A stretch of 63,298 nucleotides of DNA, counting the filler, from Octopus bimaculoides (taxonomy: Eukaryota): assembly GCF_001194135.2 (NCBI RefSeq). It is 5 parts of 4 records of this genome, joined end to end, with 100 filler letters (N's around TTAATTAATTAA, not from the genome) between each part and the next. Parts side by side here need not be neighbours in the genome. Positions count along the whole stretch, not along the records: positions 58,257 to 63,298 come from NC_068985.1; 4 more parts are not named here. One strand, given 5' to 3'. The notes under the pieces are model-generated. The model had not been told where the DNA came from. It saw nothing but the letters and a program-made list of their open reading frames with translations, and made no database searches. Below, piece after piece: positions 58,257-63,298 of this stretch (positions are counted from its first letter, which is position 1; every line of letters starts with the position of its first letter). Both the position numbers and the translations under genes were made by a program.

Positions 58257-58834
58257 ATATATATATATATATATATACCCATGCACACACATGCACGCGC
58301 GCGCACAGATGCGCGCACACACACAGAACGTACAGAAATGGGAGCATGAATATATGTATACACGATACGGTTTCATTGTAGGGTTGAAACGGTTAAACCA
58401 TATTGGCAATCTTCTCGTGTTTCAACCATCTTGTAAACTAGGAAATATCATAGAAGAATTGTTGAAATATTAATTACGTTATAAATGTCACGAGGTTCAG
58501 TAGAATTCCTTAGGATTAGTTCTGGCTCAGTATTTCACCATTCTCTCAAAGAATGTTCTCTTCTATATTAACAGATGGAGAAATTGATCGTAACAATGTC
58601 TTGAAATAAATGCGATAGTTTAAAGAGGATTGTATCAAAAACTTTCGTTGTTGTGATGGTGGTGGAGTTGGCATTAGTGGTGGTGTAGTGAGGTGGTGGT
58701 TAATCTTGAAAGACTGCTGGAACGTAAGAGTGCTGTTCGCTAAGGGCTGCATTTTCCTTTAATGATTCAAAGAAGTAATGCATAAGAATAATTTCTTATT
58801 GTTCTAATAGTTTAGTCAAGAGAGAAATGGTAGC

Positions 58835-59694
58835 GGATCTTTCTGATTTGGCGGACACCATTTTTTATTTAGTTTTTATTTAGTGTGTTTTCTACCGAAA
58901 CACTTTAAAACTTCGTATACTTGTATATTTTGTCTTATAGAACAGAGAAAAATTTCTATATTCGAAGTTATTTCATGTTAAAAGTTGTCGTATTTCGGTA
59001 ATTTCAACCAATCACTGACGTCTATTGAGGTGAAAACAATTACTGCTGTGGTTTATCAACAACACGCTGTGGCGGTGTAATGGGATCTTTTCCCTTGAAT
59101 AAAATGACTGCCGTTGTTTGTCAACAACAAGTATCGGCCGTACTGTTATTTATGACATCATTCATGTGTTTGTACTGGTTTTAGCTTTAGGGTTTTAGGG
59201 TTAGGGTTCGGGTTTTAGGGTTAGGGTTAGGGTTAGGGTTATGAGTATTTTTGCCAAATTTGGTGAAAAATTTGTGGCGGTGTATTGAACAGATTTTCAC
59301 CAAATTTGGTAAAAATACTCATAACCCGAACCCTAACCCTAACCCTAAAGCTAAAACCAGTACAAACGCATGAACGATGTCATAAATAACAGTACGGCCG
59401 ATACTTGTTGTTGACAAACAACGGCTGTCATTTTATTCAAGAGAAAAGATCCCATTACACCGCCACATTGTGTTGTTGACAAACCACAGCAGTAATTGTT
59501 TTCACCTCAATAGACGTCAGTGATTGGTTGAAATTACCGAAATACATCTTCAACACAAAATAACTTTAAAAATATAAACTTTTCTTAACAACACTAAGAG
59601 TAAAAGATGTTTTATATGACACATTCTACCAGTGTCTCAAATTTGAAAGTGTTTCGTTAGAAAACAAATGGTGTCTGCCAAATCAGAAAGATCC
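58835..59694. mobile_element. 860-bp foldback MITE with GG termini, imperfect 8-bp TSD and head-to-head telomeric tracts
   Basis: 29-bp TIR GGATCTTTCTGATTTGGC(G/A)GACACCATTT with 1 mismatch. Flanks ATGGTAGC (58827-58834) and ATGACAGC (59695-59702), 6/8 identical. Internal inverted arms at 58990-59269 and 59294-59545. TTAGGG-type units at 59186-59238 and CCCTAA-type units at 59325-59349. Confidence 0.9.
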
Positions 59695-60339
59695 ATGACA
59701 GCTCCATTAGCTATTTTTAAAACGTTAGGGCCTGGTGGAAGGAAGGAAGTACCAATGTATCCCACACAGTGGATATTGTTAAAACTCTCCCTGACCAATA
59801 GCCGAGTGATGTTATGAAACCAGGTGACAGATTAAGTGTACCCCTTCTTCCGTAATATATGCAAACTATTCGACGTGAATTAGAAAAGTTTCTCCTCTAT
59901 CAAATAATACGCAGATAGCTGAGCCTTGGTCGACCCAATGCTAACGATGAATGCACTTAATGTACTGCGTGGTGGGGACTTAACCTGCAGTCACCTGATT
60001 AGTGAAGACAGTTTCTTAGCCACATTGTTATGTTTACGTCTACTATTGATATTGTTGGTAGAGCAGAAGTTATTTTCATAAGATGGACCGTACGAATAGC
60101 GGTGGGGAAAATAATTTTCGTACGTTGTGAGACACAAGCCAGTTAACTCTGCTCTGTTGCGGTGTAATAGAAAACCTCCGATACAAGATGGTGAAGTTCC
60201 TAATAGAACTTAATTTGGCGGTTCTCCTGCCAAGCAACGTAACGTGGGCTGGCGACTAAAAACCTCCCACCCACGTGCAACTAACTCTGGGTTCAGGTAT
60301 GTTTCATTCATTTTTCTTTTGGTACCTTAATGACCTACT

Positions 60340-60660
60340 TCCTGTTACTTCTAATCAAACACATTCCGACGCAGATGTTTTTATTGAATCAGTGTAAATG
60401 TGGTGTGGCGGGGGGAATCTAGGCTGGATGTAGATATTGTCTCCGTACAAAAAGTTAACTGAGAGCGACAGTGGAGTGGCGTACCGCCTGTGTACGAATA
60501 TCCGTACACAATATTTTGTTAATCTGGGGGTGCAAGATGTTTCTTCTCCAGGTTTTTGCGTTGAAGGCGTTTGGTCTGGAAGTTCTGAGAGTGCAAAGAA
60601 CGTCATTGGATTCTAGATCTTTCTTAAAGAGTCCATTTCCAACTGAAGTACTTAGCACTT
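60340..60660 (-). mobile_element. Possible CR1/Jockey-type RT C-terminal remnant
   Basis: Minus-strand HPQINKILCTDIRTQAVRHSTVALS loosely matches ...KLYxTxVRPxLEYxSxVWS. Confidence 0.3.
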
Positions 60661-61005
60661 AAATTTACTTTTAACTTTTCCCGCTCATGTAACACTCAAA
60701 TGTTGATCCCGATTCTCTTTCCCTGTCTTTTCTTCTGAGATGGAGCCGGTAAATATACCTATTTTTTGTGGGAACTTCCAATGTATGCGAGGCTAATACA
60801 GGCTTTATTATTAACAGAGAGAACTTCTTCTACAGACCTGTCAAATATCTAAAATATCGGTAGCAATACTGATACTGCAAATGCTTTGTAGGCGATTCAG
60901 TGCCTGCAGTTGTTATTGGCGTAATGATCTTTACAAGACAGAACAAATTATTTGTAATATTTTAAAGATTGGTTCTTATTTTTATATTTTGATAATGCTG
61001 CATAT

Positions 61006-61064
61006 CCGTCAAATGTAAATAATGTAAATAATGTAAATAATTCCTCATCTCTTAAATATAGAAC
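61006..61064 (+). mobile_element. 5'-truncated 3' end of the hammerhead-bearing element, with 10-bp flanking direct repeat
   Basis: CCGTCAAATGTAAATAATGT matches the tails at ~30608 and ~53369; TGCTGCATAT at 60996-61005 and 61065-61074. Confidence 0.6.
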
Positions 61065-62563
61065 TGCTGCATATTTTGATATTTCTGAAAGTTTTGAAAT
61101 TCTATATTTCAAGATACTTGTGCTTTCATATGTATAAGTGTATGTTTTACACTTTTTATGTTTTAGATTAATATAGTTTTAAATCCCGAGATTTTATATC
61201 CTCATATGGTATATCCTCATATATACTCATATGGTATATCTTCATTTCCTATATTCAACTAAATCGGCGTTGCAGTTTTTATAAGCTCCTATTATTATAT
61301 TGATTCATTAAGTGATATTGTTCTACGTCTTTCTAACTTCTATAGTTGTCATATCATTTTTTAATTTCCTTAACATGACTTCATTCACTTCCGTCTACAT
61401 GGAGTATCGATTCTGCTTTTATGATTTTCTAAGTTACGTAATTAAATCCCCATCTCCATGCATTTCCTTTTGTTCCCATATTGCTCACCTCGGTCCCCTT
61501 AAACAAGTCTACATTATTGTTTCTTACCAAGTCTTTGTCTCAAACACATTTTCATATAATATACATTAAGCACAGTGATCCGTTTTACATCGTCACACAA
61601 ATCCATTATTACCGCATTCTTCAATTTCTTCAATCTATCCTTAAGTTACACCCATATTTACCTTGTTTGTTTTCCTTTCCGTTTCATTTCGCTTCCTCCT
61701 AAACCCTATTATTCTCACATCCCGTCATCATCCAGAGCCCAATCGTAATGCTACGTAGCATCTCTTTTATCAAATAAGTTTGATAAATAGCTGTAGCGGC
61801 ATTCCTCCTTCATCACTTCATTGTTCAGCTAACACCTCGAATTAATATCGGATCATTACAATTTTGTTGCATTGTAGCCAACTATACTTGCCGTCTATCA
61901 ACTCCTCATTTCCTTCATTCCTACTATTCAAGCAGTTGCATTATTAAGTCTGTACCTTTCGATACTGGAGGTTTAATTAACTAACTTGCTAATTAGCAAA
62001 CAGAGAAGCTATTTATTTGCATAATATCTAATCATGCTAAAATTAATTATATTTTATTAGTCCACTCAATTCAACGAATTCAGTATATTCTTTTCCCTTT
62101 CCATTTATTTATTATTTTTTAAAAACGCTTTTACCTTTTGTTTTTCATTTATCCTTATCCTCATACGGTTCAACAAACGAGAAAGAGGGTCACTGATATG
62201 TGTTTTAATGTATGTGTTTATACTCTGTTGATCCACTTTAAGAGGCTCTAGTGGAATGAATAGCAAACAACAATCGTCCATAAAGCTCTTATATCCTTAA
62301 CCATTATCACCATGACGTTTCCCTGTGATTTGCCCAAGAATTTTATTGCTAGTAATTTCTAATTTTACCTACAACACAACTACCTTCAAAATTATAGACA
62401 TTTCGTTCTAGGAAAGGGTGAAGCGGCACGACTTAATGATAGTCTGATGAAGTGTCACTCTAATATATTCAACCGCACGTACAGCGTAACTTTTCAGTCG
62501 GATTAATTTACACGTAATGTGGTTAGAACCGTAGTGGTACAGAAACACTTCTAACGAGTAATA

Positions 62564-62778
62564 ATGGTTTCAAGTTTTGGCACAAGGCCAGCAAGTTCGA
62601 GGGCGTGGGGTAAGTCGATTACATTGACACCCAGTGCTCACTGGTACTTATTTTATCGACTTCGAAAGGAATGAAGGCAAATTCGACCTCGGCAGAATTT
62701 GAATTCAAAATGTAATGACAGACGAAATGCCGCTAAGCATTTTTCCCGGCATGCTAACGATTCTGCCAGCTCACCACC
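62564..62778 (-). mobile_element. SINE family B, full length, copy 1 of a tandem pair
   Basis: Colinear with 3403-3626; flanked by 15-bp direct repeats (13/15 identical). Confidence 0.85.
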
Positions 62779-62793
62779 TTGTAACGAATAATA

Positions 62794-62998
62794 ATGGTTT
62801 CAAATTTTGCCACAAGGGCAGCCATTTTGGAGGAGGGATGAGTTGATTACATCGACGCCAGTGTTGAACTGGAACTTATTTTATCAACCCTGAAAGGATA
62901 AAAGGTAGAGTCAACCTCAACGGAATTTGAACTCAGAACGTAATGACTGACGAAATTCCACTAAGCATTTTGCCCGATTCTACCAGCTCGCCGCCTTC
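62794..62998 (-). mobile_element. SINE family B, full length, copy 2 of a tandem pair
   Basis: Colinear with copy 1; flanked by perfect TTGTAACGAATAATA at 62779-62793 and 62999-63013. Confidence 0.85.
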
Positions 62999-63234
62999 TT
63001 GTAACGAATAATAGTATTATTCTGCATATATTGTTCGTCTACTTAATTATATATTGCTCTTCGAAATGCTTATACACTGATTTTTTGCTAATGAGGTATC
63101 TTGGTGGTCCTGCACCAGTGAACTTAGTAATAATTTCAAAGTTATTGAATGAGGGTGTAGATAACCAGATGGCCGGGAATTTGGATCAAGGCTGCGTTGG
63201 GGATACACTAATTTTCTCCCTTCTAAGGACCTAC

Positions 63235-63273
<39 letters not shown>

Positions 63274-63298
63274 GAGAATATACAAATAATAACAACAG

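What the first reader, a model, noticed from the sequence alone, without database searches (positions are those of the whole stretch)
58827..59702. Foldback transposon with head-to-head telomere tracts around a 24-bp spacer
Seen: GG termini, 29-bp TIRs, 8-bp flanks 6/8 identical, and ~250-280-bp near-perfect internal arms. Eight TTAGGG-type units on the left arm and four CCCTAA-type units on the right face a 24-bp spacer (59270-59293) across a ~31-bp non-telomeric inverted segment. Each arm also carries CCAATCA next to TGACGTC, and GGCGGTGT recurs in both arms and the spacer. Known: (TTAGGG)n-spacer-(CCCTAA)n is the geometry of telomere fusions, long palindromes are fragile, and four G3 tracts can form a G-quadruplex. 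Inference, speculative: a break at the hairpin tip would leave two ends, each with correctly oriented telomere seeds ~30 bp from the break, so the element could act as a mobile fragile site primed for healing. Together with the unrelated MITE at 2079, which shares the TTTTAGGG variant, two GG/8-bp-TSD families here carry telomeric cargo. That suggests a functional link, such as recruitment of telomere-binding proteins, rather than chance.
Basis: partly seen in the sequence, partly recalled or inferred. Interest (0 to 1): 0.8.

Follow-up and report, generated by a model that had tools for sequence, protein, structure and literature searches.

The report
Foldback transposon carrying mirrored telomere-like repeats
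This is an 860-base non-coding "foldback" DNA transposon whose two mirror-image arms each carry a short, decayed run of telomere-type repeats; the structure is real, but nothing found here shows the repeats do anything.

Summary
There is an 860-bp element at 58835-59694. Its 29-nt terminal inverted repeats start with GG and match at 28 of 29 positions. The 8-bp flanks match at 6 of 8. The inner arms (280 and 252 nt) are 96.5% identical, the spacer is 24 nt, and the telomere-type units number eight on the left and four on the right. The single strand folds into one long hairpin (z = -48).

It has no coding capacity. GG termini, TIR length and an 8-bp duplication fit the published hallmarks of the Merlin superfamily, but no transposase link could be tested.

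The head-to-head telomere geometry follows automatically from any tract sitting in a palindrome's arm. Both arms share the same degenerate unit order and flanks, so one already-decayed tract was mirrored. The tract is also the least conserved part of the inner arms (26-28-nt length difference), which looks like microsatellite slippage rather than constraint.

The "mobile fragile site primed for healing" reading is conceivable but has no support here. The host was not identified.

Verdict: an ordinary new member of a known kind, of low to moderate interest.

The parts
58827..58834 (.). Left flank, putative 8-bp target-site duplication (ATGGTAGC)
   Evidence: 6/8 identical to 59695-59702; P = 0.006 for that register.
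58835..58863 (+). Left terminal inverted repeat, 29 nt, begins with GG (GGATCTTTCTGATTTGGCGGACACCATTT)
   Evidence: 28/29 complementary to 59666-59694. The one mismatch is a CpG/CpA difference.
58864..58989 (+). Left subterminal region, poorly mirrored. It includes an 11-nt tandem duplication at 58862-58884 that is absent from the right arm.
   Evidence: 78% identity over aligned columns plus 48 gap columns. The first ~21 nt after the duplication (58886-58906) are still 20/21 identical.
58990..59269 (+). Left inner arm (280 nt), near-perfect mirror of 59294-59545
   Evidence: I1/I2. 195/202 and 30/31 identical outside the tract. The 8 substitutions are listed.
59008..59022 (+). CCAATCA-C-TGACGTC (CCAAT-box-like plus CRE-like), mirrored at 59513-59527
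   Evidence: These are the only occurrences in the piece. Function untested.
59031..59129 (+). Two ~34-nt subrepeats spaced 65 nt apart (TGAAAACAATTACTGCTGTGGTTTATCAACAACA / TGAATAAAATGACTGCCGTTGTTTGTCAACAACA), mirrored at 59406-59504
   Evidence: D6/D7. blastn gives 82% and E = 1.4e-5.
59068..59079 (+). TGTGGCGGTGTA 12-mer. Further copies lie in the spacer (59273-59284, + strand) and in the right arm (59456-59467, - strand).
   Evidence: Only 5/5000 spacer shuffles share a 12-mer with the arm.
59186..59238 (+). Left telomere-like tract, 8 units (TTTAGGG, TTTTAGGG, TTAGGG, TTCGGG, TTTTAGGG, TTAGGG x3), G-strand pointing toward the centre
   Evidence: TRF reports period 6 and also period 20 (2.4 copies, 92% matches). 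Five overlapping G4-type motifs.
59239..59269 (+). 31-nt non-telomeric inner tip of the left arm; itself a near-palindrome around CCAAATTTGG (59254-59263)
   Evidence: 30/31 mirrored at 59294-59324. D10 shows it also matches its mirror in direct orientation.
59270..59293 (.). Unique 24-nt central spacer (ATTTGTGGCGGTGTATTGAACAGA)
   Evidence: It is the hairpin loop in the predicted fold.
59294..59545 (-). Right inner arm (252 nt)
59325..59349 (-). Right telomere-like tract, 4 units on the minus strand (TTTAGGG, TTAGGG, TTAGGG, TTCGGG)
   Evidence: One G4-type motif on the minus strand.
59546..59665 (-). Right subterminal region, poorly mirrored; carries a 21-nt stretch absent from the left arm
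59666..59694 (-). Right terminal inverted repeat, 29 nt, ends with CC
59695..59702 (.). Right flank, putative 8-bp target-site duplication (ATGACAGC)

Best explanation
The element at 58835-59694 is a non-autonomous cut-and-paste DNA transposon of the foldback / long-inverted-repeat MITE kind.

Shown:
- The palindrome has sharp boundaries.
- The TIRs are 29 nt, begin with GG and match at 28/29.
- An imperfect 8-bp direct repeat flanks the element.
- No open frame exceeds 51 codons and none has a credible family match.
- The single strand folds as one hairpin.

Inferred:
- A DDE transposase encoded elsewhere binds the TIRs and moves the element. A staggered 8-bp cut at the target made the flanking duplication.
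- GG termini plus an 8-bp duplication plus this TIR length are the published structural hallmarks of the Merlin (IS1016/IS1595-like) superfamily. That is the best guess, but a Mutator/Phantom-, hAT- or P-type partner is not excluded.
- The palindromic body arose by inverted duplication of one end of a progenitor, the usual route to such MITEs.
- The telomere-like tract was already in that arm, and already degenerate, when it was mirrored. Both arms share the same first unit (TTTAGGG), the same TTCGGG variant and the same flanking bases.
- After mirroring, the left tract gained (or the right lost) 26+2 nt by slippage or a 20-nt block duplication. The arms also picked up 8 point differences, 3 of them CpG transitions.
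- The tract's ultimate origin was either a short telomerase-made insertion during break repair in the progenitor or microsatellite growth from a T/G-rich seed. This cannot be decided here.

On this reading the head-to-head telomere geometry is a passive by-product of the element's symmetry, not a device.
For: - Structure: searches give the TIRs, flanks and arm identities by segment.
- Fold: one search gives one hairpin, z = -48.
- No coding capacity: searches show open frames of at most 51 codons. One search gives no credible Pfam match (one hit at 14.7 bits against a cut-off of 27).
- Merlin hallmarks: TIRs of 24-462 bp with conserved terminal 5'-GG-3' and 8- or 9-bp TSDs (PMC8101967); 8-bp TSDs shared with IS1016 (PMC10045372).
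- Shared degenerate unit order and flanks in both tracts, and the period-20 duplication on the left arm only.
- Real in-vivo decay rather than artefact: 8 inner-arm substitutions plus 1 in the TIR, 4 of the 9 at CpG sites.
- MITEs that carry microsatellites or tandem repeats are well documented, including in a mollusc (DTC84 in Donax, PMC3879986; pineapple, PMC8449440; abstracts).
- Short interstitial telomeric tracts are known to be inserted at double-strand-break repair (PMC7215372 and PMC8537989, abstracts).
Against: - Only one copy was seen, so mobility and family membership are inferred from anatomy alone.
- The 8-bp flanks are imperfect (6/8), with two adjacent mismatches.
- Arm identity is not uniform. 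It is about 96% at the TIR end, 78% with many indels across 58863-58989, then 96.5% in the inner arms. One inverted duplication followed by neutral decay does not predict that pattern.
- The 12-mer shared by the arms and the unique spacer (about 1 in 1000 shuffles) and the CCAAT/CRE pair hint at functional sites that this explanation leaves unaccounted for.
- No autonomous partner or transposase was available to tie the TIRs to Merlin.
Confidence: 0.7

Rival explanations
1. The element is a mobile fragile site primed for healing. The long palindrome breaks at its tip, and the inward-pointing telomere tracts recruit telomere proteins or telomerase to cap both new ends. On this view the telomeric cargo is functional and maintained.
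For: - The orientation is correct for both arms by direct reading.
- Long, similar arms with a short spacer are the parameters that make palindromes fragile (PMC7999016).
- In yeast a 64-bp interstitial telomere tract is converted to an ectopic telomere in 12% of break-induced replication events (PMC7736798).
- G4-type motifs are present on the appropriate strands.
Against: - The geometry is forced by the palindrome, so it had a 50% prior.
- The tracts are short (53 and 25 nt), degenerate, and unequal between the arms. They are the least conserved part of the inner arms.
- 31-43 nt of non-telomeric DNA lies between each tract and the centre.
- There is no census, breakpoint, neotelomere or binding evidence, and none can be obtained here.
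- The host and its telomere motif are not verified.
Confidence: 0.05
2. It is not a transposon. It is a local fold-back (snap-back) inverted duplication made during repair of a break near a pre-existing interstitial telomeric tract, and the apparent TIRs and TSD are fortuitous.
For: - Short inverted repeats can prime large palindromic duplications (PMC7999016).
- Each arm tip contains a perfect 10-bp palindrome, CCAAATTTGG.
- Only one copy was found.
- The flanking repeat is imperfect.
Against: - The palindrome ends sharply at GG/CC and has an 8-bp flanking direct repeat (P = 0.006). That is what insertion predicts and what snap-back does not.
- Snap-back predicts uniform arm identity and a centre at the priming repeat. 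Here the centre is a unique 24-nt spacer and the arm identity is patchy.
Confidence: 0.08
3. It is an assembly or library artefact, that is, a chimeric palindromic read.
For: Palindromic chimeras are a known artefact class (own knowledge).
Against: - The arms differ by 8 substitutions in the inner part (3 at CpG) and by a 26-28-nt tract length difference.
- The subterminal regions are strongly diverged, with indels.
- There is a unique spacer. Artefacts give perfect, spacer-less palindromes.
Confidence: 0.02
4. Same kind of element, but its main biological effect is as a hairpin-RNA source. Read-through transcription of a ~400-bp perfect-stem hairpin would feed small-RNA pathways, possibly from the CCAAT/CRE-like promoter elements in the arms.
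For: - The hairpin is extremely stable.
- Sub-threshold miRNA-precursor matches fall on the central hairpin (mir-629 at 53 bits against a gathering score of 72; MIR8706 at 49.5 against 95).
- The CCAATCA/TGACGTC pair is present in each arm.
Against: - The Rfam hits are below the gathering scores and are generic hairpin matches.
- There are no expression data.
- The same could be said of any foldback MITE.
Confidence: 0.1

Closest known systems
Merlin superfamily non-autonomous elements / MITEs (eukaryotic relatives of bacterial IS1016/IS1595)
   Same: Terminal 5'-GG, TIR length within the 24-462 bp range, and an 8-bp target-site duplication (PMC8101967, PMC10045372). Merlin families are annotated in Octopus vulgaris (PMC13282606), which matters only if the host is a cephalopod. 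That host guess rests on my memory of the neighbouring SINE-like repeat and is unverified.
   Different: No DDE_Tnp_IS1595 transposase or autonomous partner sharing these TIRs was available. The TSD is imperfect. Mutator-type elements also often start with G-rich termini and make 8-10-bp duplications (partly own knowledge).
Foldback elements (Drosophila FB, sea-urchin TU, Galileo and other long-TIR elements)
   Same: Almost the whole element is two inverted arms around a short centre, and it has no coding capacity.
   Different: Classical FB arms are built from arrays of short tandem subrepeats and make 9-bp duplications. Galileo belongs to the P superfamily and makes 7-bp duplications (own knowledge). 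Here the arms are mostly unique sequence, with only a 65-nt-spaced repeat pair and the telomere-like tract, and the duplication is 8 bp.
Microsatellite- or tandem-repeat-carrying MITEs (e.g. DTC84 of the clam Donax trunculus, PMC3879986; pineapple microsatellite MITEs, PMC8449440)
   Same: A short non-autonomous TIR element with an internal simple-repeat tract whose length varies.
   Different: Here the repeat unit happens to be telomere-type (TTAGGG and T-run variants), and it is present twice, mirrored, because it lies in the arm rather than in the centre.
Short interstitial telomeric sequences inserted at double-strand-break repair (PMC7215372, PMC8537989) and head-to-head arrays left by telomere fusion
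   Same: A short internal run of telomere-type hexamers, and overall (TTAGGG)n...(CCCTAA)n polarity.
   Different: Fusion relics join the arrays directly. Here about 86 nt of non-telomeric DNA (31 + 24 + 31) separates them, and the arrays are embedded in a much longer palindrome that continues outward with unique sequence.
Telomere-repeat-bearing mobile elements (Tetrahymena Tel-1, cited in PMC2831315; Oxytricha TBE1, own knowledge; telomere-associated Penelope-like elements, PMC4522978)
   Same: Mobile elements that carry the host's telomeric repeat.
   Different: In all of those the repeats sit at the element's termini or 3' end and relate to how the element ends or primes. Here they are internal, 350 nt from the termini, and face the centre.

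Membership tests
Merlin superfamily (non-autonomous member) | Conserved terminal 5'-GG-3' at both TIR ends | tested here: met
   GGATC... at 58835 and ...GATCC at 59694. Criterion taken from PMC8101967.
Merlin superfamily (non-autonomous member) | TIRs of 24-462 bp | tested here: met
   29 nt at 28/29, extendable with lower identity through the whole arm.
Merlin superfamily (non-autonomous member) | 8- or 9-bp target-site duplication | tested here: inconclusive
   ATGGTAGC / ATGACAGC match at 6/8; P = 0.006 for that register. This is compatible with an old 8-bp TSD but is not exact.
Merlin superfamily (non-autonomous member) | TIRs shared with an autonomous element encoding a DDE_Tnp_IS1595-type transposase | not testable with these tools
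   The piece holds no transposase. No host genome or repeat library (Repbase/Dfam) is available.
MITE / non-autonomous TIR transposon | TIRs, flanking TSD, small size, no coding capacity | tested here: met
   860 bp. TIRs and TSD as above. The longest open frame is 51 codons, with no credible Pfam match.
MITE / non-autonomous TIR transposon | Multiple dispersed copies with the same termini | not testable with these tools
   - No second copy in the 5-kb piece.
- The metagenome scan with the 18-nt TIR start gave 32 hits. None extends beyond the 18-mer (23-35 of 60 positions match), so they look like chance.
- The single prokaryote-genome hit (a Methylophagaceae genome) likewise does not extend beyond the 21-mer searched.
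- Viral scans gave zero hits.
- Arm frames are absent from the protein collections.
- None of these collections is expected to hold the host genome.
Drosophila-type Foldback (FB) elements | Arms composed of arrays of short tandem subrepeats | tested here: not met
   Each arm holds only one pair of 34-nt repeats 65 nt apart and the telomere-like tract.
Drosophila-type Foldback (FB) elements | 9-bp target-site duplication (own knowledge) | tested here: not met
   The best flanking repeat is 8 bp. The 9-bp register does not match.
Telomere-fusion relic / head-to-head ITS | Two telomeric arrays joined directly or nearly so, with subtelomeric rather than mirrored sequence outside | tested here: not met
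   86 nt of non-telomeric DNA lies between the tracts. The sequence outside the tracts is mirrored for more than 190 nt at 96.5%.
Telomere-bearing transposons (Tel-1 / TBE1 type) | Telomeric repeats at the element's termini | tested here: not met
   The termini are GGATCTTTCTG.... The tracts lie 351 nt (left) and 345 nt (right) inside the ends.

The most novel reading that the evidence does not exclude
A transposon family (perhaps in a cephalopod, whose telomere motif is TTAGGG) spreads long, hairpin-prone palindromes that carry inward-facing telomere seeds. Breaks at the hairpin tip would then be preferentially capped into two stable chromosome ends. That would make the family a mobile source of chromosome fission and karyotype change, or a dispersed binding platform for telomere proteins.
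Probability: 0.04. Interest if true: 0.75.

Novelty: new member of a known kind. Interest (0 to 1): 0.25.

Why it matters
On the likely reading this is one more non-autonomous DNA transposon with a simple-repeat passenger. It is useful for repeat annotation, and it gives an example of how transposon spread, rather than chromosome fusion, can disperse short interstitial telomeric tracts. That matters when such tracts are read as relics of rearrangements.

It would matter much more only if a census showed that the family keeps the inward-facing tracts under constraint, or that copies sit at healed breaks. It would then link transposition, palindrome fragility and de novo telomere formation.

Tried and rejected
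Searches for other copies:
1. A scan of metagenome contigs with the first 18 nt of the TIR gave 32 loci. None extends beyond the 18-mer (23-35 of 60 positions match), so I treat them as chance hits.
2. A scan of bacterial and archaeal genomes with a 21-mer from the arm gave one hit in a Methylophagaceae genome. It does not extend beyond the 21-mer.
3. Three viral-contig scans (TIR, arm 19-mer, arm tip) gave no hits.
4. I tried to reach other copies through spurious ORFs. Ten window ORFs are not in the 15-billion-protein collection. The 51-codon arm frame shares no words with any protein.

Host identification:
5. Translated frames of the neighbouring SINE-like repeat gave nothing at E <= 0.001. 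ARAGORN found no tRNA. The host remains unverified. 'Cephalopod' is my recollection of the SINE only.
6. The Octopus vulgaris repeat paper holds one small supplementary document (6,437 characters), too small to contain a consensus library; I did not open it.

Structure and annotation:
7. Rfam gave only sub-threshold miRNA-hairpin hits on the telomere hairpin. I reject these as generic hairpin matches.
8. Nested insertion of an inner palindromic MITE (58990-59545) into an older MITE would explain the patchy arm identity. I reject it: there is no TSD or TIR at that boundary, and the mirror similarity continues across it at lower identity.
9. A k-mer search of the left half for arrays of subterminal binding motifs found nothing beyond the telomere-like units.
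10. Pfam on the flanking ORFs and on the element's frames gave no credible match.
Full report
**What is there**

The piece 58257-63298 is AT-rich (36% G+C) non-coding eukaryotic DNA with simple repeats and a SINE-like tandem. Inside it, 58835-59694 is an 860-bp near-palindrome.

A gapped alignment of the left half against the reverse complement of the right half shows five zones:
- A 29-nt terminal inverted repeat that starts with GG, 28/29 identical. In one search's segmentation the first 28 nt score 27/28.
- A subterminal zone (58863-58989) that is only 78% identical over aligned columns and has 48 gap columns. One gap is an 11-nt tandem duplication private to the left arm.
- An inner arm, 195/202 identical.
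- A telomere-like tract, where the left arm is 26+2 nt longer.
- A 31-nt non-telomeric tip, 30/31 identical.

The centre is a unique 24-nt spacer (59270-59293). The flanking octamers ATGGTAGC and ATGACAGC match at 6/8 (P = 0.006 for that register). The mirror similarity stops exactly at GG/CC. As single-stranded DNA the element folds into one hairpin: -347.8 kcal/mol against -85.9 +/- 5.4 for shuffles, z = -48.

**The telomere-like tracts**

- Left (59186-59238): TTTAGGG, TTTTAGGG, TTAGGG, TTCGGG, TTTTAGGG, TTAGGG, TTAGGG, TTAGGG.
- Right (59325-59349, read on the minus strand): TTTAGGG, TTAGGG, TTAGGG, TTCGGG.

Both tracts are bounded by the same bases, GGTTTTAGC on the outside and TTATGAGT on the inside. 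Both start with the TTTAGGG variant, and both contain the TTCGGG variant. A single tract that was already degenerate was therefore copied into both arms, or homogenised between them.

The left arm then gained, or the right lost, 26+2 nt. TRF sees a 20-nt period on the left (2.4 copies, 92% matches), which fits a block duplication or slippage.

The G-rich strand runs toward the centre on both arms, and G4-type motifs are present on those strands. But any tract inside one arm of a palindrome must be mirrored, so the telomere-fusion geometry is not an independent observation. Inward rather than outward orientation had even odds. The same holds for the CCAATCA/TGACGTC pair 'in each arm', which counts as one observation.

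**Is it real DNA?**

Yes, most probably. The inner arms differ at 8 positions and the TIRs at 1. Four of these nine are CpG to TpG/CpA differences, the signature of ordinary germline decay. The tracts are unequal, the subterminal zones are diverged with indels, and there is a unique spacer. Chimeric-read artefacts give perfect palindromes without spacers.

**What kind of element**

There is no coding capacity. The longest open frame in the element is 51 codons, and neither these frames nor the flanking ORFs have a credible Pfam match.

Termini, TIR length and flanking repeat match the published structural definition of the Merlin superfamily: TIRs of 24-462 bp 'with conserved terminal 5'-GG-3'', flanked by 8- or 9-bp TSDs (PMC8101967), and 8-bp TSDs shared with IS1016 (PMC10045372).

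I therefore read it as a non-autonomous foldback-type MITE, probably Merlin-mobilised. This is a structural match only. The defining link, TIRs shared with an element encoding a DDE_Tnp_IS1595 transposase, could not be tested. Mutator-, hAT- or P-type partners remain possible.

It is not a Drosophila-type FB element, because the arms are not arrays of subrepeats and the duplication is 8 bp, not 9. It is not a telomere-fusion relic either: 86 nt of non-telomeric DNA lies between the tracts, and mirrored unique sequence continues outside them. Nor is it a ciliate-type telomere-bearing element, because the tracts lie about 350 nt inside the termini.

**Family census**

- The 18-nt TIR scan of metagenome contigs returned 32 loci, none of which extends beyond the 18-mer.
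- The prokaryote-genome scan returned one hit that likewise does not extend beyond the 21-mer searched.
- Three viral scans returned nothing.
- There is no second copy in the piece.
- The arm's open frames are absent from the protein collections.

None of these collections is expected to hold the host genome, so the absence says nothing about copy number.

**Host**

The host was not identified. The tandem at 62548-63012 looks, from memory, like a tRNA-derived cephalopod (octopus) SINE, but I could not verify this.

If it is a cephalopod, two published points apply. TTAGGG is the only experimentally determined cephalopod telomere motif (PMC13218726). Merlin, Mutator and MITE families are annotated in Octopus vulgaris (PMC13282606).

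It is conceivable. Palindromes with long, similar arms and short spacers are fragile (PMC7999016). In yeast a 64-bp interstitial telomere tract can be converted into an ectopic telomere (PMC7736798).

Against it:
- The tracts are short (53 and 25 nt), degenerate, and separated from the centre by 31-43 nt.
- They are the least conserved part of the inner arms, which looks like neutral microsatellite dynamics.
- There is no evidence of breakage, healing or protein binding.

MITEs that carry microsatellites are well known, including in a mollusc (PMC3879986). Short interstitial telomeric tracts are known to be inserted during break repair (PMC7215372). A passive origin therefore needs nothing new.

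**Left unexplained**

- The patchy arm identity: about 96%, then 78%, then 96.5%.
- The 12-mer TGTGGCGGTGTA, shared by both arms and the otherwise unique spacer (5/5000 shuffles).
- The CCAAT-box-like plus CRE-like pair.
- The near-palindromic arm tips around CCAAATTTGG, which could give an alternative three-way junction.

These may be transposase or host-factor sites, or traces of how the palindrome formed. Other family members are needed to decide.

**Verdict**

It is a new member of a known kind. Interest is 0.25. The exciting reading keeps a probability of about 4%.

Noticed in passing
62548-63012: Two full copies and the start of a third of a ~228-230-nt unit in tandem, 78-80% alike. Read on the minus strand it looks like a tRNA-derived SINE head with a B-box-like GAGTTCAAATTCC. 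From memory it resembles an octopus SINE, which would hint at the host. ARAGORN finds no tRNA, and a protein-frame search found nothing.
   Followed up: partly
58907-58989 vs 59546-59645: This zone of the two arms is only about 67-78% alike, with several indels, and is sandwiched between a ~96% TIR-proximal zone and 96.5% inner arms. A single inverted duplication with neutral decay does not predict this. No TSD or TIR marks a nested insertion at the boundary.
   Followed up: partly
59068-59079, 59273-59284, 59456-59467: The 12-mer TGTGGCGGTGTA occurs in both arms and again, in direct orientation, in the otherwise unique spacer. Only 5 of 5000 spacer shuffles share a word that long with the arm. 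It may be a protein-binding site or a partial duplication.
   Followed up: partly
59247-59269 and 59293-59315: Each arm tip is itself a near-palindrome centred on the perfect 10-mer CCAAATTTGG. The hairpin tip could therefore alternatively fold into a three-way junction instead of a simple loop.
   Followed up: no
59217-59346: Rfam sub-threshold matches to miRNA precursor families fall on the telomere-like hairpin: mir-629 at 53 bits against a gathering score of 72, and MIR8706 at 49.5 against 95. They are probably generic hairpin matches.
   Followed up: partly
58257-58327 and 63237-63271: (AT)n and (TA)n microsatellites sit at both ends of the piece, with a CA/CG-rich 18-nt-period stretch next to the left one.
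   Followed up: no
61012-61041 and 61195-61245: Small tandem repeats: AATGTAAAT x3.3, and a 25-nt unit x2 (TATATACTCATATGGTATATCCTCA).
   Followed up: no
58650-58705: A GGT/GTG-rich run (gttgttgtgatggtggtggagttggcattagtggtggtgtagtgaggtggtgg) about 130 nt left of the element. It is not telomere-like.
   Followed up: no
59725-59730: A lone TTAGGG lies 31 nt to the right of the element. About 2.5 such hexamers are expected by chance in 5 kb on both strands, so it is not meaningful.
   Followed up: yes
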